Source: Gnetum montanum
Taxonomy: Eukaryota; Plantae; Gnetophyta
Direction of reading: 5' to 3'
DNA: 64,000 nt
Assembly: GCA_015680685.1 (NCBI GenBank)
Contig: MNCI01003374.1
Location: 124,001-188,000 of the forward strand
Numbering within the stretch: the first letter of the stretch is position 1; the number at the start of each line of letters is the position of its first letter. Shown here in pieces: positions 5,385-55,900 of this stretch. The position numbers and the translations under genes were made by a program. Under the pieces are notes generated by a model. That model worked only from the letters and a program-made list of their open reading frames with translations. It did not search any database and was not told the DNA's origin.

Positions 5385-5579
5385 TTTTTTTTTTTTTGAG
5401 AAGAGTTCGGGATTTTATTAGAAAAATAAACATGTGTACATACGGGATCTGCACACCTGTCAGTCAGCAGTCACGGGCAGGGACCATCCTGACAGACCCA
5501 GCAGGGTCCACAGGTGCCTTCACCCCAAAACAGCCACCTCTGCTGAAGATTGCCATCCACCCCAAAACAAGGTCCCAAA
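5385..5579 (-). mobile_element. Short 5'-truncated LINE (3' end only), same 3' terminus as LINE at 12752
   Basis: Poly-T run 5385-5397; TSD ACAAGGATTA(T) at 5375 and 5580; terminal 45 nt resemble 12762-12810. Confidence 0.85.
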
Positions 5580-5823
5580 ACAAGGATTATAAAGATCTGC
5601 TTTCTTGTAATATTTTACTTTTCATATATAATAGAAATCTAATGTAATATTTTAGATTTCCCCTAGTGATATAGTTATTGTTTCAGGAAAAAATCAATTA
5701 ATCAGTTCCTCCAGCATAGAACTGTTGTCTATTTATGAAATGCATTAGTCATTCGGTTATTTGTATTGATTTCTTAAGTGACTTCTTTAACGTAGTCTTT
5801 TCTTCGTGTGTTATCATATTCAG

Positions 5824-7002: not shown

Positions 7003-7820
7003 TTTTTTTTTTAATTTGGAAAAAGGTTGGCTTAGATCAAATAAGAAAATAATATGTATAATCAAGATGGCAGGGTCAGAAGATCCTCCCCTGCCCAAGG
7101 AGGCCAAAATCTAGAAAATAAGGGAGAAACACCCCCGGCCAACGCATGGGAGAAGCACCTCCAGAAGACAACAGACCACAAAAACAGGGAAAACTACCCC
7201 TTGTAAGCACAAAACAAAGAATGCACAATCAGAAAAACAGAATGGCCCACTCAAGTGATGCTCATTGCGAAATGACCTATTCTATTGGGACCACCTGAAG
7301 ACTAGTCAGAACCGAGAAACACTGAACAAGAAACAAACAACATATGGCCCTAACAAGAGAAACAAAGAGCCAATCATAGGCAGTAGGGGCCCCTCAGTTA
7401 TGGTGGGGCAATCGGGAATAGGCACACCTAGGTTGCACCCTAGAGTGGATTCTATCCAGGATCTCCTACTGGTGCTGGGAGGCCATAAAAGCAACAGCCT
7501 ATTGAAACTTTAGGAACTCTTCTTCCTTGCTTCGCCTTTCCTTAGGAGGTTTGTTCTTCGTTTTCTTAGGGTGAAATTCTGAAGCAACAGAATGAATGTA
7601 GTAGTGCAGAGCTGTCCATGCCATGCTCTTGTTGATATTCATAATCACATAGTGACATTGCCCTTCTTGGAGCCAACGTCTAGCATGCAAATCATGGGCG
7701 TAGTCCAAACGGGCAGTCATTTGTTGCTCTTCTGGGAGAGCTCTAACTCATTGTTCCTCAGCCACTTTTGCTTGGATCTATACATGCAATACTCAAACAA
7801 TGCATTTCATGTTAAGAATT
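7003..7820 (-). mobile_element. 5'-truncated LINE encoding a degenerate coiled-coil + J-domain region
   Basis: Poly-T at 7003-7012; minus-strand ORF 7499-7720 plus read-through (LDYAHDLHARRWLQEGQCHYVIMNI...YIHSVASEFHPK...FLKFQ*AVAFM) aligns with the J-domain region of the LINE at 13217-13490. 5' boundary approximate. Confidence 0.8.
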
Positions 7821-12303: not shown

Positions 12304-12850
12304 CAAATAATTCTATAAAAGGAATTCTGAAATTGGTCCTATAGATCCAAGGGTCTTAGTGGATTCAAGTAAAAATTTAGTTTCAATTTAAGATTTTTTT
12401 TGTCAGCTAACTTTCCTTTTTACTTTATAATAGAATATTTTCTAAATTACATAAAGTTAACTTCAATAAATAGGTATGCAACCAGTTGTAACATGTTCTA
12501 TTATATGAATAGTGTTGATGTCTTAGCATAGTGTCTACTATAAGAGTCTAACACTTCATCCTTTCATTTCCTTGTAAAGGTCTCATGCAAGTATATCAGA
12601 AATGTGGAAAGAAGATGAAGGAGCAGTTTGAACTAAGAGTTTCCAAGATGCCTCCAAGGAATGAGAATCATAGGGTTATTCAGAATGGTCATGACGAGGT
12701 CCATGAAGAAGTATCATTGAATAATAGGCCTCAATCCCAAGCTCATAAACCTTTTTTTTTTTTTGAGAAAGTGTTCGAGATTCTATTAGAAAATAGTGAA
12801 AGTATGTTACATGAAATTACAACAGGGGGGTCACCAGTGGTGGCCGCACC

Positions 12851-12936
12851 GAGGGGGAAGGATCCCCCAATCGCTCACAGCATCTCACCCAGNCTGAGGG
12901 GGAAAGATCCCCGATCGCTCACGGCATCTCACCCAG
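12851..12936. repeat. Two-copy ~45-bp tandem repeat in LINE 3' UTR
   Basis: GAGGGGGAAGGATCCCCCAATCGCTCACAGCATCTCACCCAG repeated with few changes. Confidence 0.85.
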
Positions 12937-13216
12937 GCCGCCCGGCCGAGGGTAGAGAGCCACGAGAAGAAATCAAAAAGCACTAATCACCAAAGAGANN
13001 NNNNNNNNNNNNNNNNNNNNNNNNNNNNNNNNNNNNNNNNNNNNNNNNNNNNNNNNNNNNNNNNNNNNNNNNNNNNNNNNNNNNNNNNNNNNNNNNNNNN
13101 NNNNNNNNNNNNNNNNNNNNNNNNNNNNNNNNNNNNNNNNNNNNNNNNNNNNNNNNNNNNNNNNNNNNNNNNNNNNNNNNNNNNNNNNNNNNNNNNNNNN
13201 NNNNNNNNNNNNNNNN

Positions 13217-13824
13217 ATCAGCTCATGCAGAAGGTCGAGAGTATTCTGGTGTTCCTCTGTGTCCATGAAGTTGGTTGCCTGCTAGATACCCTGCATGGCT
13301 GCCTGCCGTCTGTTTCTGTCCTCATGGGAGGTGCTGGCGTCGGGGTGGCAGTGCGCCAAGGTTTGGCGGATGTATCTACGAAGCTCGTCCCATGAACTCT
13401 CGCAACTGATACCTAACGTAAGGTACGGGCAACGTCCCCCACGTAACCACTGTCTGGCGTTATGCTCGTGGGCACGATCTAGCTGATGTTGTCTCTGCTC
13501 TTCCTCCTCCAAAAGCTGGGCGCGCTCCTCCTGCTCTGCCTGCTCTCTTTGTCTCCGGGTTTCATCCTCCTGCGTGAGCTCCTCCCGCACCTGGGCTCTG
13601 ATTTCATTGATGAGCCGTGCCCTGGCAGCGTCCGCCATAATGTCCTGCTGTCTAGCCCGTTCTTGCTCCCTTGCCTGGAACTGGGCTTCCAACTTGCGGC
13701 GGGCCTGGGCAAGGGCCTCCGTCCACTTCGCCTCCCATTCCCTCCTTTCTGCCTCTCTGGCTTCCTCCGCCACCCTCTTTCGTTGTTCCTCATTCCAAGC
13801 GGAGGTTTCAGGGGGGCCAGACAT
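13217..13824 (-). pseudogene. LINE cargo part 2: coiled coil + DnaJ/Hsp40 J-domain (HPD at 13339-13347)
   Basis: E/R/Q/A-rich helix of about 120 aa, then CPYLTLGISCESSWDELRRYIRQTLAHCHPD...AAMQGI*QATNFMDTEEHQNTLD, collinear with the J consensus DPYEVLGV..AS..EIKKAYRKLA...HPD...FQEINEAYEVLSDPEKRAIYD. Confidence 0.85.
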
Positions 13825-13829
13825 TTCTG

Positions 13830-14633
13830 GGGGGGCGGGGGTAGACTGGTCCTGTCGCGCGGGGGGATGCCGCTCCCTCGGGGCCCTACGGCCCCACGTG
13901 ACGCCAGCACCCCAAGGGCCCCAACACTCTGCCCCCCCAGTGGCCTAGGGGGCATCTTGACGAGACCCCCCGGGGGGGGGGCAGAGGAGGAGGGGTGCTG
14001 CCCCCACTCTGCCCCCCACCACAGAGCCAGAATCACTCCTGAGTGACGACCCCGACGCTTGAGGCGAAGGGCTTCCTTAAAATAGCGGGGGAGATTGACC
14101 TGGCAGCCTGTTTTGAGGCAACAGAGAGAGGTGAAGTGCATGCCCTGTAGCTTGGATCCGTTGTCGGACTGGACAAAGAACCTGTCGACCAGGTCCACAC
14201 CACGTGCCCAAAGGCGGGGGAGGGCAGATCTAGGCACCTGCCTGCTCTTCGTCCTGGGGATTGGCCCGTTAAAGAACAGCTCCGCGTCCTGGAGGCCGTG
14301 GGTGGAGGGCAGGATGGTCTCCCCAGCGATGGGGGCCCCCAGACAGTTGGCAATCGCTGCCTCCGTCACCCAGATCTCCTGCCCCCGGAAGAAGGTACGG
14401 TCGTTGACCCAGTTTGAGAAGAAAGCATCATCGGCCAAATTTGGGTCCCCCACCAGTCGCTGTAGTGGTACAACCCACCCACATTGAACCACCAACTGCC
14501 AGAGCTTCTCGAATTCCTAAAAGGCGGCGTAGTCTGGCTCGAATGTGGGCGTGGTTCCCATGGCGCTTTCAATTTCTTTCTACGCGATAAAGGCCTGCCA
14601 GACCAGTCGCTGTGGAGGGGGGCACCGCTGCTG
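13830..14633 (-). pseudogene. LINE cargo part 1: putative plant transposon protein (Transposase_32/PF20167-like) segment + Pro/Gly-rich linker
   Basis: QCGW...DAFFSNW...FRGQEIWVTEAAIANCLGAP...LCCLKTGCQVNLPRYF fits the family pattern GW..EFYAN..VRG..I....IN..LGLP..INLG. Recognised by eye. Confidence 0.6.
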
Positions 14634-16340
14634 TCAAAAAATGAAATTATTTTTGGCCTTCCACGCTACCCAAAGAAGTAGTGTGGCCCAGGAATCACCG
14701 GTCAGGCGTCTCAGGGGGGGGGGGCACTGCCGCCGTGTGCCACGTGTCGCGCATGCAGGGGCAGTCGTAGGCGAAGTGGAGGGTAGTTTCTGCTGCACCC
14801 CCGCATGTCGGACACGTGTCTGTGTCAAGCAGCCCGCGCCGCCTTAACAGGGCTCTGACAGGCAGCGCGTTGTGATGCAACAACCAAAGGAAAAATTTAA
14901 TTTTTTCAGGCAACCTTCCGCTCCAGATCTGCCGCCATGTGTCGCAGCGCGAATACTTTTCAGCCATGATGGCTCTAGGCTCGAGGTTAGCCCAACCCGA
15001 GGCTTGCATGTCACGCACGTGTCTGGCCACTGCCTGCCAAGATTTAGAGTCCCGCGCCGTCGTGTCCCTGCGGACATATTTATTGCGGATAATATTAATC
15101 CATGGGACCGGGTCCTGATGCGGTTGTGAGAGCCGGAGAATGAGCCGTTGCCGCCCCAACATCAAATCGTCCTCGAACGTCGTGATGCCCAGGCCGCCTG
15201 TGCTGCGTGGGCGCGCCACTTGCTCCCAACGGACCAAGTGCAATTTGCTCCCCCCTCTACCCCCCCAGACGAAGTGACGAACCAAGGAATTGACGACATT
15301 AATGACGGTACCGGGGGGGGGGGCGGCCACCGCAGCCACGAAACGCGCGGTTGCCATGAGGATTCCTGCGGCCACCAGTAGGCACCCCTTGCGGCTCAAG
15401 AATCTGTTAGCCCAATGGCTTGCCCTTCGCTCCATCTTTTCCAGCAGATGACCCCACGCCATGGTCCTTCCCCACCGGAAAATGGGGATGCCCAGGTATG
15501 TGTCGCTAGGGGCCCCTGGCGGAATGGCCAGGGTGTGCGTCACCCTTGTTTTAATCTGCTCATCCACGTTAACGAAATAAGCTGTGGACTTAGCTCTGTT
15601 GACTTCCAGCCCCAGCTCAGCGGCCAATCGAGATAACGCCAAGTTTATGCATCGTGCTTGTGGGACCGCTGCCCTGCTTAGCAGCATCGTGTCATCCGCA
15701 TAATGTTCCGCCCGGCAAGTCACCCCGGCTATGCTAAGTCTGTCCACCCCGGAGGTACTGCAGTAATGTTGCATTAGATCCATGGCAATAATGAAGAGGA
15801 GGGGGGAGCGTGGGTCCCCTTGCCTCAGCCCCCTCCCTGGGGATGCGAGGCCCCACAACCGACCCCCCACATCAAAGGAGAACCCCGCCGAGGATTGCAG
15901 GTGGATGCACAACCGGGTGAATTGCGGGTCGAAGCCTTTTTGTTGCATGATGGACTGCAATGCTTCCCAACTAAGGGTGTCGTAAGCTTTCGTGATGTCT
16001 AGCTTGAGGCAGAGTCCCGGGAAACCCGAAGTCCCAAGCGAGTGGATCACCTCCTGCATGAGGAGGATTTGGTCCTGGATGACCCATCCCTGCACAAAGC
16101 CTGCTTGGTTCTTTCCCACCAGCTTGGGCATGAGTGGCGTAAGCCTATGCACCAATAGTTTCGAGAAGATTCGGAGGATCACGTTGCACACTCCGATAGG
16201 GCGAAACTGTTCAGGTCGTTGTGCATCAACTTGCTTCGGGATGCACACAATTCATGAGCAGTTTATCTCCCTACGGATCTGTCTCCTGGCCAGCATGAGG
16301 TTCAGTGCATCAAGCAGATTGGGGCCCACGATATCCAAGA
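14634..16340 (-). pseudogene. LINE ORF2: reverse transcriptase + zf-RVT (endonuclease lost by 5' truncation)
   Basis: FRPIGVCN, KLDITKAYD, GLRQGDPRSPLLF, YADDT, YLGIP, LHLVRWEQVARPRSTGGLG, CPTCGGAAETTLHFAYDCP. A frameshift in the G11 run (14714-14724) leads to WVAWKAKNNFIF. Confidence 0.95.
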
Positions 16341-17771
16341 ATGTTTAAGAAATCAGACCAATGGGAATAGACCTTGCTACCATGATGGCTCAAGGAATGC
16401 AACAATATCAAGCCCAACCTTTAGGCAATCAAAGTCAACAAGAATTAAGTCATCTAAGAAACCTTATCCAAGTGTTTATGAAGCTTAATCCTTTTAAGTT
16501 TTTAAGAGAAATGGATCTTGCTAGGGTGGAGGCATGGTTGAGTGACATAGAAAGAGTTATTAATACCTTGGGGTGTCTTGAAACAAAGAAGGAAACCCTT
16601 GCTATTTACATGCTACAAGGTGAGGTAAACTTATGGTGGCAAATAGAGATGGTCAAAATTGCTGATGTGGATAATCACACTTGAGATGAATTTATAGAGA
16701 TATTTAATGAGAAATATGTCACGTAGTTCTACCTAGATAAAACGAGATAAGAGTTCTTCTTTTTAATGCGGACTCCTAATTCTAGTGTTAGTGTTGATGA
16801 AGCTAAATTTGTGCAGCACATGAACCTAAGTGAGAGAGATAAGACTAATTGATTTATGGAGAGTTTCATTCCATCTTCCTTGTACATATACATGCCAAAG
16901 TCTAAATGTTTCAGCCTAAGACATTTGCAAAAGCACTAGAGAAAGCTAGGATCACCAAAGATGATTGGCAGAAATCTCAAGTTAATCACAAGTCTTGTTT
17001 GCTACCCAAGGGTCCAAGTTTCATAAATCATGGATAGCCAAGTCACCCAAGTAGGTCCAAGAATTTTCATAACAGTTTTAGAAATAGTGAATCAATACCA
17101 AACTCAATGAAGTAATAGAAATTAGAACTACCTCATGCAAAGACAAGGTAGTAATTATCCTATGGGAGAAGGTACAAATCAAAGTGTCAATATGGAATCA
17201 TCTTAAAGTCAAAAATGTTACATATGTGGACCTCATTTGAAGAGGTTTTGTCTAGAAAATCAGACCAATAATACTAGTCAAGCTAACCAGGGATCAATTC
17301 ACAATGTGTCACAATTCGTTCATCAAACTATGGGGAGACTTCAGGCTGTAGTTGAAAATCAAGGTGTGCAATTTCAAAATTTTAGCATAGAAGGGTACCA
17401 CTCATTGCTTTAGCTTACCTAGATTAGTGTTAAATGAAATCTAAGTTGTGTGCCAATAGAGGGGTGTATTGAGTTAGCCAATGGGTCTAAAACCAAAGTC
17501 AATAGGAAGGTCCAAGGATGTACATTGTTCCTAATTGGGGGAGAGTTTGAGTTGAGTTGGAAACAATTTCATATATTTTGGAACCTTTGACATGTCATTG
17601 GGCATAGGTTGGTAGCAATTATAGATCATAAGGGACAATTACTTATAGGTAAATGGTCAAGAAATAAAAATTCAAGGGGAACGTTAGACAACTACAAGGA
17701 ACTTGGTTGACATTAGGCAAATTAATAAGGAGCTTTGAAGGGGTAATCAAGTCTTCATTGTTTATTGCAAA

Positions 17772-19440
17772 TCAACAATTGTGGAAGATGATCAAAGTTA
17801 TAAGGAACATTTTTGCATATAGGAATGAAATAGGTCTATGTATCTCTTTTTCTATTTTTGCCCTATTTCTGTGATGGAGTAGTGTGCCCCACGCCAATCC
17901 ATGCTCGATTCTTATGGTGCCGACGTCGTTAGATGAGTAGAGCAGAGTAGTTGTTGAATTGAGTATTAGGGTAGGACTTTTCCTTGTGAATCGAGTCACT
18001 GTGATTCTTTGGTCGTATAGGACTTTTCCTTGTGCATGAGGGCTGATTGTTTTTCTCTCTTAGTTGCTGCTGTTGCTGCTACTACTATGTTGCTACTATA
18101 GTCATCGCTTGCAATAGTTGCACTTGCATCACACATACCTTTGTGGGTTGCACCATAGAGATTTTTTTTTGTTGTAGTGCTTTGATCCATTGCTTTCTAG
18201 TGAAGAGTTTTGTGGATGGTCAAAAACCCTAAGGGTTAGGATTTTCATTTTTGCATTCTCCTTCACGTAGTGCAAGCAAGGTAGCAACATTGCTTTAACA
18301 CAGTGGAAAGAAAGCAGCATGAACACCATGCCATAGCAAGGAGGAAGCATTTCATGTTTCGACATTTTGAAGACTTCATGGATTGTTGGCAGTTGAAAGT
18401 GGTGGTTCGTTGACTACATGCAATGTCGCCAGATCTAGTTGGTGATTCTTCAAGTGGTATCGTTGCTTCTTTGCCATTTTATGAATTGCCTGATGATTTA
18501 TATGAATCTATTACTCAAGAAGTTTTTGGAAGGTATGTTTTTGTGCAAATTTTGGATTATTTACCTCATTGCTCTAATTTTTTGAATCATTTGAATTTGG
18601 TTTGGAAAGATTAGGGTTTGGATGCCATTCATGTTCGTTATTTGTCTAACTCATTCCTGCTAGTAGAATTTCTTGACTTGAAGATGGTTTCTAAAGCCCT
18701 TCAATATTGGTATTTTTAATCATCATCATGCTATATTGATTATACGAAAGTGGACTTCTTTTTTTAACCTAGCATCTCTTGAATTTCGAAAAGTTCCTTG
18801 TTTTGCTGAATTGTTTAATCTTTCTTTAATTTTTGAAAAAGTTGAAAGGGATAGTCTCTCATATTGGGCTAGTCAAGTACTTTAAAATCTTAGTTATAGC
18901 TAGTGGTTTTTGTAGGACTCATTATATGATTGAAATAGATTTTGATTTTCTTAAGTGAGAAATTCTTATACATGTTGGCAAAATTGATTGTGTGCAAAAA
19001 GTTGTTTATCACAATCTTTTAAGTCATGTCACTATTGTCATCAAGAGGGTCATATGTTTGATTTATGTTCTATTATGTTGCAAAAAAGGCAATGCAAGCA
19101 CATCATCAACAAGTTACTGTCAATGTTTCTAAGGTTTCTTCTATTAATGTTAAGGATATTGCTAAAAATGTCTTTTCAAGTAAGGTTTTAAGGAATTTAG
19201 TTTTCAAAAATTTTTCAATGACTAAGGGAAAATGAGTATATAGTCCTAAGGTTTCATAGAATCCTATTGTTGATTTATATGGTTTTCAAATGATTTTTCA
19301 TAGTAAGAAGTGTCAAAGTAGTTTATCTATTGGTGAATATATGCCAAATCTTTAGAATGGTTAGCTTGCTCAGGTTTTTTTTCATTACAAACAATCCATT
19401 TACTACTATTTGTTAAAATATTGAGAATCAATTCATGTAT
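17772..19440 (+). mobile_element. Degraded LINE 5' part (UTR + ORF1, DUF4283-like and zinc knuckle) sitting where the Tekay RT should be
   Basis: 18423 onward: ..LNLVWKD*GLDAIHVRYLSNSFLLVEF..KALQYWYF (ORF1 RRM-like); CHYCHQEGHMFDLC (CX2CX4HX4C) near 19027. Boundaries approximate. Confidence 0.7.
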
Positions 19441-21282
19441 CGTGTCATTGTTAGCAAGCCTTATGTGTTCTACCTTGATGCATTAGGAGATGGCATGGGT
19501 TGTGTTTTAATATAAGATGATAGGGTAATTGCTTATGGTTTCCGCTAGCACAAAACTCATGAGAAGAATTACTCTACTTGTGACTTGGAATTAGCAGCTA
19601 TTGTCCATGCACTTAAAATTTGGTGTTACTATTTGTATGGAGCAAGTTTACAAGTGTGGATTGATCACAAAAGCCTAAAGTACATTTTCAAACAACAAAA
19701 CTTGAACCTAAGGCAAATGAGATGGATTGACTTCCTTAGTGACTATAATTTTGAGATATGTATCATGAAGGCAAAGGTAATAAGGTAGCTGATGTAGTAA
19801 GTAATTGAGGAATTTTAAAGGCCATAATGGAAATCAAGGATCAAATTCCATCTATCATAGCTAAAGCACAAATTGATGATTCCTTTTGTTAGAAAGTTAA
19901 GTCTCAAGTCTTAGAAAACCAAGAGGCAGAATTTTTCACTAGGGAAATGAAGTTTTAAGGTTTAAAAATAGAGGATATGTTTCTCAAGGTAATAACCTTA
20001 TAGAAAAGCTCATGTATGAATTTCATAATCCTCCTATAGCCGGGCATCTTTGTGGAAACAAAATGTATCAAAATATGAAGTTAGAATTTTGGTGGCTAGG
20101 AATGAAGGTAGATGTAGCATCATTTATTGCTAAATGTGTCACTTGCCAACAAGTCAAACTGAATATAGGCATCTAGCAGGCTTATTATGTTTTCATGATG
20201 TGCCCGAATTCAAATGGGATGTAATCAACATGGACTTCATTGTTTGGTTGCTAAGGTCACAAAGAGGAAATGATTCTATTATTGTGGTTGTAGACAAATT
20301 TTCTAAATCAGCACAAGAAAACTTATGCTGCAAAAAGGACAACAAAAATCTATATTAAGAACATCATTAGGTTGCATGGTGTTCTTTTAAAGATAATTTC
20401 TAATAGGGATACACTATTCTTCTTTAAATTTTGGAAAGAGGTTCAAAAGGCTTTTGGAACTGAATTAAATCCAAGCATTGCTTATAATCCCTAAACAAAT
20501 GGTCAAGTAGAAAGAGCAAATCAAAGGCTAGAAGACCCCTTGAGAGGTTGTGTTCTTGATAATCCAAGAAGTTGGGAAGACTAATTACCCTTGGTTGAAT
20601 TTACTTATAATAATTGCTGTCATAAATCTGTAGGCATAACTCCTTTTGACGTTTTGTATGGGAGGAAATTTTGAGTTCCCACTTCATGGAACAAGTTAGA
20701 AGATAAGGTTATAATTGGACTAGAACTACTTCAAGACATGGAACAAAAGTTGAGAATTATAAGGGAAAGGCTCAACTAGATAGACAAAAGAGTTATGCAG
20801 ATAAGAGATGAAGATCCCTAGAATTTGAAGTGGATGAGAAGTTTTTTCTTAGAGTTTCCCCCATGAAGACAATTGTTAGATGTGTAAAGAGATCAAAATT
20901 AACCCCAAGATTCATTGGATTGTTTGATATTTTGGAAAGAATTGGGCTTGTGACATATAGATTGGCTTTACCCCCTCAACTGGCAAACATGCACAATGTT
21001 TTTCATGTAAGTATGTTAACAAACTATATTTCAGATCTATCTCGTGTTTTGAATTGGCAACATATTCAAGTGGAGGTAGACTCTTCGACGATGGAACAAC
21101 TAGAGAGAATCCTAGATAGTCAAGTAATGAGGTTGTAAAATAGGGAGGTTTGTCAAACTCAAGTCAAATGGCAGAACCATGGAGTGCATGAGGTTACTTG
21201 GGAAATGGAGGATGAAATGGATGAACTTTACCATTTTTGTTTCTAGATTCTTAGAAGGCAATCTCTTTAAGTGGGGGAGTTA

Positions 21283-52900: not shown

Positions 52901-55900
52901 AACACTTCATGGAAATCAATAAATACCTTTACAAGGTGTGTGTTGATGACATGGTTCAATGGTATGTACTTGATGCTAATCAACTACACATGCTCCAAGA
53001 TGCTCATGGACGTCCTTGTGGGGGCCATTATGCTGGGAGGTCCATGAACATTAAGATCCTCATGGTAGGATATTATTGGCCAATAGTTTTTAGGGATTCT
53101 CACCACTTTGTTTGCTCCTGTGAATGCTATCATTGTGATGGTGGAATGATTGCTAGTATGGAGGGACCTCAACAATGGATCCAACCACTGGATCCCTTTG
53201 CATTGACTCTATGGATCCTATTACTCCCATGTCAAATGAAAAGGCATACATCATAGTCGTTGGTGACTATTGTATGAAATGGGTAGAAGTTGCAGTTGTC
53301 ATTGATTGCACATCTTCCATAGCTACTTAGTTTGTACAACAATATGTTGTAAATAGGTTTGGGGTGCCACATGCAATTATTTTTGATAATAGAACTCATT
53401 TTACAAGAACTACCTTTCGGAAGCTCATGTAATGCTTGGGGGTTGAACATAAATTAACAACATCTTACCACCCCAAGCCAATGGTCAATCATAGGTTACA
53501 AATAGGAAAATAACAAAAATACTAACCCAAACCATTAGGAAATATAGGAGGGAGTATAGTAGAAAGCTCAACGATGCCCTTTGGGCCTATCGCTCCACTT
53601 GGAAACTTCTTATTAGCTACTCTTCCTATGAGCTTGTGTATGGGAAATTACCAACACTTCCAATCCAAACAAAACTTTGTACACTATCAATAGCCTATGG
53701 CTTGACCTTGACCTAAGTCTAGCACAAAAAAAAAAATACTAATGAATCTTAATTTGCTAGATGAGAATCAATTGGTAGCCCTGTCATCTAATGAAGTGCA
53801 CAAGGAATTTAACAAGCCATGACATGATCTTGGAATCAAGAAAGTAAAATTTAAACCAAGAGATAGGATCCTATATTGGAATCCCACACATGTGCCATAA
53901 AGAACAAAGCTTCAAAAGATATGGAAGGGGTCATATATTATCTATAAAACCTTTTCCTTTTGGGTCATGTTAATATACAAACCTAAAAGTCTAAATATAA
54001 AGTTACTAGTCAACATGTAACAAATAAAGCCCTTCCATGAACCCAAAAGAGCCAGTGATCAAAACACCTCAATGGATGGACATGAACACTAAATTTTTTG
54101 GACTTCTTCCTTCCAACTCAGTCATTGGAGAGGTGGCCATCCATGCTGATCAAATATGTGGCTCGCTGGTTTTTTCATTTTTTGTTTTACATCATTTTAG
54201 CACAATTTCCCTTTCTTAAATATTTTACAACTTCTTTTATATTTTACTTTAATTGGGTTGGATTTCTTTTATGCTTTTCTTATGTTTTGTTTTTCTTCTT
54301 TATTGTTGCTAGGACTATGTAAAATTGCAGTTATTAATTGATGGTGGTTTGTACTATAATGTTATTTGATTCTTAATGTATGGATTCCATCTTTGAATTT
54401 TGGTGTTGATATCTAATACATGATTTCTTTTTCATGATAATAGGCAATGATCACACATCATCCATCCATCCACGAAACTCTATGGTGTTTCCTTGTTTTG
54501 GAAATATGTGGTCCCTTATTAAATAAAACTTTTAAAAGAACTTGTGATCTTGGTAGTTTCCAAACTTAGGAAGGATCAAATGGATAGAAAAGGGTGTGAA
54601 TTTAAAGGGATTTGATGCTCTTTGTACTTACCTACCCTCTTGGGTGCACGAGTGTTTTCATGGATTTCTCACCATTCCATCGTTGAGAAATAACAAGAAG
54701 TTAAGTCTTTGCATGATGTGGTTCCCATCCAAAAACTCAAAATAATAATAATAATAATGGGAATTCAAAGCACAACCTATAGATGAAATAATGGGCTACA
54801 ACAATTGGTTATGAGACTACAATAACATGTTACCCATGCCTGAAGATTCCCTTTAAGTAAGGCTCATCTCACTTCTTGCTTCTCTTCTCTTCTCTTCTAG
54901 GAATGGTGATTGATCCATGGGGATGCTCTTGTGCCTTGAGGGAGTGGACTAGTCTTAGAGTATTGAAGCAAAGTCACTAAAAGTGGTTGGTTTTTTATTC
55001 AGAATAAGGATGGGTGTTATCAAGTCATGTTAACCACAAAAAATCCACAAGGGACTTCATGTGATGATGATATGGGACTCCATTTCACTCTTCACCTCAT
55101 CCATCTATGCTTTCCATATCTCACCTCACTACCTCTTTTCATGTTTTGTTTAATGTTTGAGTTTGATGCATCAAAGTTCTTCAATAGTTTCTTTGGTGAT
55201 TTTGTCCTTAACTAACCATGACCATGAATCACCCATGGGGCTCATGGACTCTTTAGTTTGAAGGCATGAAAGGGCATTAAGGGCATGAGCTTTCTATGGG
55301 TAGGACCCACTTGCACACCCCTTAGTTCCTCATCCTTTAGGCATTTTTGTATTCAAATCTTTTGTGCTCAACTTTGGTTATGTCCAATTGTGCACTCCTT
55401 CATGGCATTTCTCTAATCATTCTCCCAATTAAATCTCCTTTTTTATGAAATATCTAGCCCTCTTCATGCATTTCATTGTGTTATAGGCTACTTGGACTTC
55501 CTTTGGACTCTAATTTTATGTAAAAAATCCTTGTTTATCCCTTTTTTTTGAAAGTTAAAAAGTCTATTTTTTGGCCACATTGATAGGATCCCATTGACAT
55601 AGTTGGATGCATCAACATGATCTCATTGACAGGATTCCATTAACATAGGGAAAAATTTCTATAAATAATGCCCAACACTTAGCAAATTTTTTTCATTTTC
55701 TCTTAAATAGAAAAGAATTTTTTGCAATTTTTAGAGCCCAAAACCTTCCAAAGCCCATATATTTCCAATTTCTTGTTTGATTAACCTTGTTTTTTGTTCC
55801 TATAACTACTAGAGGTGAGCTTTACATCATGGAGGCAACAAGCCTTAGGTCTTTAATGAAAAATTCTTGAAGTTTTTTCTAACTCCCACAAGGTTTAACT

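What the first reader, a model, noticed from the sequence alone, without database searches (positions are those of the whole stretch)
13217..16340. L1-type LINE carrying a DnaJ/Hsp40 J-domain cargo downstream of its reverse transcriptase
Seen in sequence: the gap-free stretch 13217-16340 (minus) runs RT, zf-RVT, Transposase_32-like segment, Pro-rich linker, ~120-aa coiled coil, then J-domain. The J-domain has all hallmark parts: PYLTLGI, ELRRYIRQTL, an intact HPD at 13339-13347, and MQGI*QATNFMDTEEHQNTLD matching FQEINEAYEVLSDPEKRAIYD residue for residue. It lies inside the element, upstream of the poly(A) tail. Established knowledge: HPD J-domains recruit and stimulate Hsp70; polyomavirus T antigens use their own J-domains; hepadnavirus RT needs Hsp40/Hsp70; Arabidopsis J-proteins act in methylation-reader complexes (DNAJ1/2 with SUVH1/3 anti-silencing, SILENZIO with MBD5/6 silencing). 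I am not aware of a described LINE lineage encoding a J-domain. Inference: the retrotransposon encodes its own Hsp70 co-chaperone, either to mature its RT/RNP or to counter host silencing.
Basis: partly seen in the sequence, partly recalled or inferred. Interest (0 to 1): 0.95.

Follow-up and report, generated by a model that had tools for sequence, protein, structure and literature searches.

The report
Plant LINE with a J-domain tail
A dead, front-truncated copy of a plant LINE retrotransposon carries, after its reverse transcriptase, an extra protein tail ending in a J-domain, the module that switches on Hsp70 chaperones; a second old copy nearby shows this tail evolved as a protein, and I found no such LINE in the literature searched.

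Summary
The observation largely holds. On the minus strand, 12752-16340 is a GC-rich (about 58%), 5'-truncated L1-type LINE copy inside an AT-rich Ty3/gypsy element.

- **Core:** RVT_1 (9e-25) and zf-RVT (1e-15).
- **Add-on:** about 430 codons: a 177-aa domain, a Pro/Gly linker, a 115-aa E/R/Q/A-rich helix, and a J-domain-like end with HPD at 13339-13347.
- **J-domain support is below threshold but consistent:** Pfam DnaJ is the top match (7.8e-4, under the cut-off). A two-copy profile hits 17 J-domains among 18 PDB matches.
- **Second copy:** an old, 5'-truncated copy (7003-~7810) has the same helix, J region and poly(A).
- **Selection:** over 103 codons the two copies agree at codon positions 1/2/3 in 50/54/17% of cases, so the module evolved under protein-level selection.

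The copy is broken: two or more frameshifts, five in-frame stops, a 218-N gap. 'Transposase_32-like' is not confirmed by Pfam. No relatives turned up in any protein or metagenome search, so RT-to-J linkage rests on this one copy. Hsp70 recruitment is inference.

The scan noted this family before on other DNA of this genome (59 first-reader notes, none followed up). New variant of a known kind; interest 0.6.

The parts
12752..16340 (-). Copy c1: 5'-truncated, pseudogenised L1-type LINE (includes a 218-N gap)
   Evidence: GC 0.51-0.73 per 100 nt against 0.25-0.40 in the flanks. CpG o/e 0.66 against 0.20-0.27. Pfam RT domains. Poly(A) at the 3' end.
15490..16242 (-). Reverse transcriptase domain
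   Evidence: Pfam RVT_1, E 9.4e-25, residues 3-253 of ORF 14695-16248. Best database relatives are plant L1 ORF2 proteins at 31-35% identity.
14740..14967 (-). zf-RVT zinc-binding domain of plant L1 ORF2
   Evidence: Pfam PF13966, E 1.3e-15, residues 428-503.
14616..14732 (-). Last stretch of canonical ORF2 homology, read in a shifted frame after a C11 run (14714-14724)
   Evidence: tblastn of 120 plant L1 ORF2 proteins. Hits continue in the next frame down to 14616-14637, and none reaches further 3' than 14590.
13986..14516 (-). Middle domain of 177 aa, possibly PF20167/ATHILA-ORF1-like
   Evidence: Open frame. No Pfam hit and no homologs. Atlas neighbours are mostly PF20167 at 0.90. AF2 pLDDT 32.
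13825..13985 (-). Pro/Gly-rich linker with homopolymer runs; it holds a frameshift
   Evidence: Three-frame translations. C10+G6 run at 13966-13981.
13456..13800 (-).
   Evidence: E 23%, A 17%, R 17%, Q 14%. Only 17 strongly hydrophobic residues and no clear heptad register.
13217..13428 (-). J-domain-like region: HPD at 13339-13347, TAG stop at 13282-13284, cut off by the gap
   Evidence: Pfam DnaJ E 7.8e-4. Both phmmer hits in the PDB are Hsp40 J-domains. Profile A1 gives 17 J-domains among 18 hits, all in register. Nearest named Atlas cluster is DnaJ.
12999..13216 (.). Scaffold gap (218 N) hiding the last residues of the J-domain, the stop and the start of the 3' UTR
12752..12998 (-). GC-rich 3' UTR (12765-12998) and A13 tail (12752-12764)
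   Evidence: The last 74 nt resemble those of fragment c3 (score 24 against 8.5 +/- 1.5 in shuffles).
7003..7810 (-). Copy c2: old, 5'-truncated copy with the end of the charged helix, a J-like region (HPK at 7565-7573, two stops), a 3' UTR and an A10 tail (7003-7012), without any gap
   Evidence: tblastn E 1.3e-8. 103-codon alignment scores 150 against 30 +/- 4.8 in shuffles. Pfam DnaJ E 0.069 on 7502-7660. CpG o/e 0.26.
5385..5650 (-). Fragment c3: 3'-terminal piece of a related LINE with an A13 tail (5385-5397)

Best explanation
The stretch 12752-16340 (minus strand) is a dead, 5'-truncated copy of a diverged plant L1-clade LINE. In this lineage the ORF2 region is extended beyond its normal end, at the place where some plant L1s carry RNase H.

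The extension is about 430 codons: a 177-aa domain of unclear kin, a Pro/Gly linker, a long charged helix, and a C-terminal J-domain with an HPD loop.

- **Shown:** the parts and their order in c1, the J-domain homology, a second diverged copy of the helix-J part, and protein-level constraint on the helix-J part.
- **Inferred:** in intact copies the J-domain docks on host Hsp70 and triggers its ATPase, loading the chaperone onto the LINE's own large protein or RNP in cis. This would aid folding, RNP assembly or remodelling during target-primed reverse transcription.

This particular copy makes no such protein.
For: - RT and zf-RVT are present.
- Canonical ORF2 homology ends at about 14616, and none of 120 plant L1 ORF2 relatives covers the add-on.
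- Pfam DnaJ is the top hit for c1 (E 7.8e-4, the sole match on the 57-aa piece) and for c2 (E 0.069).
- The PDB searches return essentially only J-domains, aligned from helix I to HPD.
- The AF2 secondary structure is helix, HPD loop, helix.
- c1 and c2 align over 103 codons (score 150 against 30 +/- 4.8). Identity by codon position is 0.50/0.54/0.17 and dS is saturated.
- The stops in the two copies sit in neighbouring codons, not the same one. That fits independent decay.
- GC3 of 0.65-0.72 and CpG o/e of 0.66 are uniform over the RT and the add-on.
- c2 shows J region to poly(A) with no gap.
- From established knowledge: HPD J-domains stimulate Hsp70.
- From the title of PMC3753637: the human LINE1 ORF1 protein interactome has been mapped. 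I did not read the paper. That such interactomes include Hsp70-family proteins is my own recollection.
Against: - The DnaJ score is below Pfam's cut-off, and the full domain could not be scored across the stop.
- The fold model is weak and Foldseek found nothing.
- No relative of the helix-J or middle parts was found among 1.84 billion representatives or in the word-indexed search.
- Only c1 links the RT to the J region in my data.
- c2's 3' end is not significantly like c1's (56 of 1000 shuffles).
- The J-to-tail link in c1 crosses a scaffold gap.
- c2 has HPK instead of HPD.
- No Hsp70 binding test could be run.
Confidence: 0.6

Rival explanations
1. The module is a passenger. A host mRNA for a helix-J protein was joined to LINE RNA by template switching or read-through. 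c2 would then be a processed pseudogene of that host gene, and the J-domain would do nothing for the element.
For: - No external relatives were found to show a family-wide layout.
- c2 holds no RT.
- c2's 3' end is not significantly like c1's.
- Both copies carry stops.
Against: - GC3 and CpG content of the add-on equal those of the RT and differ from the AT-rich host.
- Third codon positions are saturated while positions 1 and 2 are kept. This means long coding constraint, whichever lineage carried the module.
- The add-on starts exactly where canonical ORF2 homology ends, and in the same frame.
- Many unchecked first-reader notes report RT-to-J copies elsewhere in this genome.
Confidence: 0.15
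2. The J-domain serves against host silencing rather than for folding. It would draw Hsp70 away from methylation-reader complexes, or mimic the host J-proteins that act there, as SILENZIO with MBD5/6 and DNAJ1/2 with SUVH1/3 do in Arabidopsis.
For: - Plant J-proteins do work with methyl-DNA readers and HSP70 in TE silencing (PMC8616336).
- The neighbouring middle domain may be kin of ATHILA ORF1/PF20167, another TE-borne accessory domain.
Against: - There is no sequence tie to those host J-proteins.
- A cis-acting chaperone role needs fewer assumptions.
Confidence: 0.15
3. The J-like end is a decayed or J-like fold that no longer works with Hsp70, or a chance likeness.
For: - The Pfam score is below the cut-off.
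- c2 has HPK.
- Model pLDDT is 62 and there is no Foldseek match.
Against: - Two copies with 29% identity both have DnaJ as the top Pfam hit on their J piece.
- 17 of 18 PDB profile hits are J-domains in the same register.
- HPD is intact in the young copy.
Confidence: 0.1

Closest known systems
Plant L1-clade LINEs (ORF2 with APE endonuclease, RT and zf-RVT, some with an added RNase H)
   Same: - RT and zf-RVT domains, and a poly(A) tail.
- 5' truncation of copies.
- The best protein relatives are plant L1 ORF2 proteins.
- An extra domain placed after zf-RVT.
   Different: - RT identity to any database protein is only 31-35%.
- The add-on is not RNase H. It is a 177-aa domain, a linker, a charged helix and a J-domain.
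- None of 120 relatives has it.
Insect R1 LINEs with a C-terminal viral-type SF1 helicase domain in ORF2 (PMC4686597)
   Same: A LINE lineage that gained a foreign C-terminal domain in ORF2 (abstract seen).
   Different: Different clade, host and domain: a helicase, not a co-chaperone.
J-domain of polyomavirus large T antigen (own knowledge, not tested here)
   Same: A selfish genetic element carrying its own HPD J-domain to use host Hsc70.
   Different: - A DNA virus, with the J-domain at the N-terminus.
- There it acts on Rb-family complexes and replication.
- No sequence tie was shown.
Host type III J-proteins of plants, such as SILENZIO (PMC8616336)
   Same: A J-domain combined with unrelated partner domains, with links to TE control and HSP70.
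   Different: - These are host genes, not mobile elements.
- No detectable specific similarity: 0 hits in 1.84 billion representatives.

Membership tests
L1-clade LINE | Reverse transcriptase of the non-LTR type | tested here: met
   RVT_1, E 9.4e-25. The best relatives are plant LINE-1 ORF2 proteins.
L1-clade LINE | C-terminal zinc-binding domain of plant L1 ORF2 (zf-RVT) | tested here: met
   PF13966, E 1.3e-15.
L1-clade LINE | APE-type endonuclease and ORF1 upstream of the RT | tested here: inconclusive
   The copy is 5'-truncated at about 16340. Nothing upstream belongs to it.
L1-clade LINE | Poly(A) tail and target-site duplication | tested here: inconclusive
   An A13 tail is present. 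The only candidate TSD is an imperfect 20-23 nt likeness at 12732-12754 and 16403-16422.
J-domain (Pfam PF00226 DnaJ) | Profile score at or above Pfam's gathering cut-off (27.8 bits) | tested here: not met
   19.9 bits, E 7.8e-4, on the 57 aa before the stop (profile positions 2-40 of 63). c2 gives 13.7 bits. The whole domain could not be scored across the stop.
J-domain (Pfam PF00226 DnaJ) | HPD tripeptide in the loop between helices II and III | tested here: met
   HPD at 13339-13347 aligns with the HPD of DNAJB1, DNAJB9 and others. c2 has HPK.
J-domain (Pfam PF00226 DnaJ) | Four-helix fold with a helix II/III hairpin | tested here: inconclusive
   AF2 gives helices at 27-41 and 46-61 around the HPD, but pLDDT is 62. 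No Foldseek match. Helix IV is hidden by the gap.
J-domain (Pfam PF00226 DnaJ) | Stimulates Hsp70 ATPase | not testable with these tools
It needs a bench assay.
PF20167 Transposase_32 / ATHILA ORF1-like | Pfam profile match | tested here: not met
   No Pfam family at E up to 10 or up to 1. Only Atlas neighbours at 0.90.

The most novel reading that the evidence does not exclude
A plant LINE lineage has kept, under selection and through long divergence, its own Hsp70 co-chaperone module fused behind ORF2. This would make it a retrotransposon that recruits the host chaperone machine in cis, for its own replication or to blunt silencing. I found no element of this kind in the literature I could search.
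Probability: 0.45. Interest if true: 0.8.

Novelty: new variant of a known kind. Interest (0 to 1): 0.6.

Why it matters
LINEs are thought to depend on host chaperones, but none is known to encode a co-chaperone. A LINE-borne J-domain would give a direct handle on two questions: how Hsp70 serves target-primed reverse transcription, and how a plant retrotransposon meets silencing. A single point change in HPD would serve as a clean test. It would also add a new case of domain capture by non-LTR elements. Five literature searches found no described case.

Tried and rejected
- **Read laying:** No read depth, copy number or RNA evidence was obtained. They were read only inside local scripts, and I print none here.
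- **Complex prediction (J piece with E. coli DnaK):** not folded, because the tool refuses a eukaryote-microbe pair. No verdict.
- **The search for homologous proteins:** nothing with the helix-J ORF or the middle domain.
- **The search of protein representatives with the helix-J ORF:** 0 hits.
- **Metagenome scans with helix-J and with the RT:** nothing.
- **Foldseek on the J model:** no match. The model is too weak and truncated.
- **AF2 of the middle domain:** pLDDT 32, so it was not searched.
- **DNA-level alignment of c1 and c2:** not alignable.
- **tblastn of the middle domain against the window:** only E of 0.18 or worse, so a domain shared with neighbouring LTR elements is not supported.
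- **Scoring the whole J-domain across the stop:** left out.
- **Host species:** remained coded.

Full report
**What is there**

The window is AT-rich (about 31-40% GC), with one GC-rich island at 12-16 kb. The island is the minus-strand stretch 12752-16340. It runs at 51-73% GC per 100 nt, with CpG o/e 0.66 against 0.20-0.27 in the flanks. A run of 218 N at 12999-13216 lies inside it. The island ends in an A13 tail at 12752-12764.

It interrupts the gag region of a plus-strand Ty3/gypsy element. Gag-like ORFs lie on both sides, and there is an RT_RNaseH match at 19585-19785.

**The LINE core**

The 517-aa ORF 14695-16248 matches RVT_1 (9.4e-25) and zf-RVT (1.3e-15). Its best relatives among 5.8 billion proteins are plant L1 ORF2 proteins, at only 31-35% identity. 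The lineage is therefore a distant one.

Nothing of an endonuclease or ORF1 is present. The copy is 5'-truncated at about 16340.

I ran tblastn of the 120 relatives onto the copy. Canonical ORF2 homology passes into the next frame at a C11 run (14714-14724) and stops at about 14616-14637. No relative covers anything further 3' than 14590.

**The add-on**

The parts follow in this order:
- an open 177-aa stretch (13986-14516), in the same frame as the ORF2 tail;
- a Pro/Gly-rich linker full of homopolymer runs, in which the frame changes again;
- a 115-aa stretch that is 71% E/A/R/Q (13456-13800). It has few hydrophobic residues and no clear heptad register, so it may be a charged single helix rather than a coiled coil;
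- the J-like end (13217-13428).

**J-domain evidence**

- Pfam DnaJ is the top match of the 180-aa ORF (E 0.0042; three unrelated families at E 1.9 or more). It is the sole match of the 57 aa before the TAG stop: 19.9 bits, E 7.8e-4, profile positions 2-40 of 63. This is under the 27.8-bit cut-off.
- phmmer against the PDB returns two hits only, both Hsp40 J-domains.
- A profile of the two copies found here (A1) returns 18 PDB sequences at E up to 10. Seventeen are J-domains, all aligned from helix I to the HPD.
- The ESM Atlas gives a DnaJ cluster as the nearest named neighbour. This is a lead only.
- AF2 gives helix, HPD loop, helix, but at pLDDT 62. Foldseek finds nothing.

**A second copy and selection**

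tblastn of the helix-J ORF against the window found a homologous stretch at 7571-7738 (E 1.3e-8). This copy (c2, 7003-~7810) starts within the charged helix. It has HPK at 7565-7573 and two stops, and it runs without any gap through a 3' UTR to an A10 tail. Its CpG o/e of 0.26 equals the background, so it is old. c1, at 0.66, is young.

The two copies align over 103 codons, scoring 150 against 30 +/- 4.8 for shuffles. They are not alignable as DNA.

Identity by codon position is 0.50, 0.54 and 0.17, with chance at 0.25. dS is saturated and dN is 0.79. Neutral decay would hit the three positions alike. Most of this divergence therefore arose while the sequence was read as protein.

The stops in the two copies lie in adjacent codons, not the same one. 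That fits independent decay.

GC3 is 0.65-0.72 in the RT, middle domain, helix and J alike, which argues against a recent graft of a host gene.

A third fragment (c3, 5385-~5650) shares the last 74 nt with c1 (0 of 1000 shuffles reach the score). c2's end does not do so significantly (56 of 1000).

**Limits**

- Only c1 links the RT to the J region in the data I could reach, and its J-to-tail link crosses a scaffold gap.
- The copy is broken: two or more frameshifts and five in-frame stops. The frameshifts sit at homopolymer runs and could partly be assembly errors.
- The helix-J and middle parts have no detectable relative in 1.84 billion representatives, in the word-indexed searches or in metagenome contigs.
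- 'Transposase_32-like' fails Pfam and rests on an Atlas lead alone. PF20167 is known from extra ORFs of Athila elements (PMC11728184).
- Sequencing-run look-up: 20 runs under eight coded organism labels (A-H), in 12 studies, hold parts of the stretch, 34% of its sampled words at most. This hints at related copies in kin.

**Earlier notes of this scan**

First-stage readers noted LINE plus DnaJ 59 times in this genome, including 'full-length, TSD-bounded' copies. None was followed up. I treat these as leads.

**Reading**

The best explanation is a dead copy of a diverged plant L1 lineage whose ORF2 region ends in a middle domain, a charged helix and a J-domain. That the J-domain loads host Hsp70 onto the element's own protein or RNP is inferred from what HPD J-domains do. 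An anti-silencing role is a rival.

Five literature searches found no LINE with a J-domain. The nearest precedent found for domain capture at the ORF2 C-terminus is the helicase of insect R1 elements (PMC4686597).

Noticed in passing
window 12585-12751 and 16361-19785 (+): A plus-strand Ty3/gypsy LTR retrotransposon whose gag region is split by the LINE copy. Gag-like ORFs lie on both sides, and there is an RT_RNaseH match (3.6e-14) at 19585-19785.
   Followed up: partly
window 5385-5650 (-): A third, short 3'-terminal LINE fragment with an A13 tail. Its last 74 nt resemble those of the main copy. It holds no coding part.
   Followed up: partly
window 12732-12754 and 16403-16422: Two alike stretches of 20-23 nt flank the insertion, about 60 nt outside the GC-rich boundary on the 5' side. 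This could be a degenerate target-site duplication or an internal repeat of the gag sequence. Unresolved.
   Followed up: partly
window 14714-14724 and 13966-13981: The frameshifts of the LINE copy coincide with long homopolymer runs (C11; C10 followed by G6). Some apparent breaks may be assembly errors rather than mutations.
   Followed up: no
window 52909-53253 (+): Weak Integrase_H2C2 match (E 0.0035), one more decayed LTR-retrotransposon remnant. Outside the LINE copy the window has almost no ORF longer than 110 aa.
   Followed up: no
window 12893: A single N inside the 3' UTR of the LINE copy.
   Followed up: no
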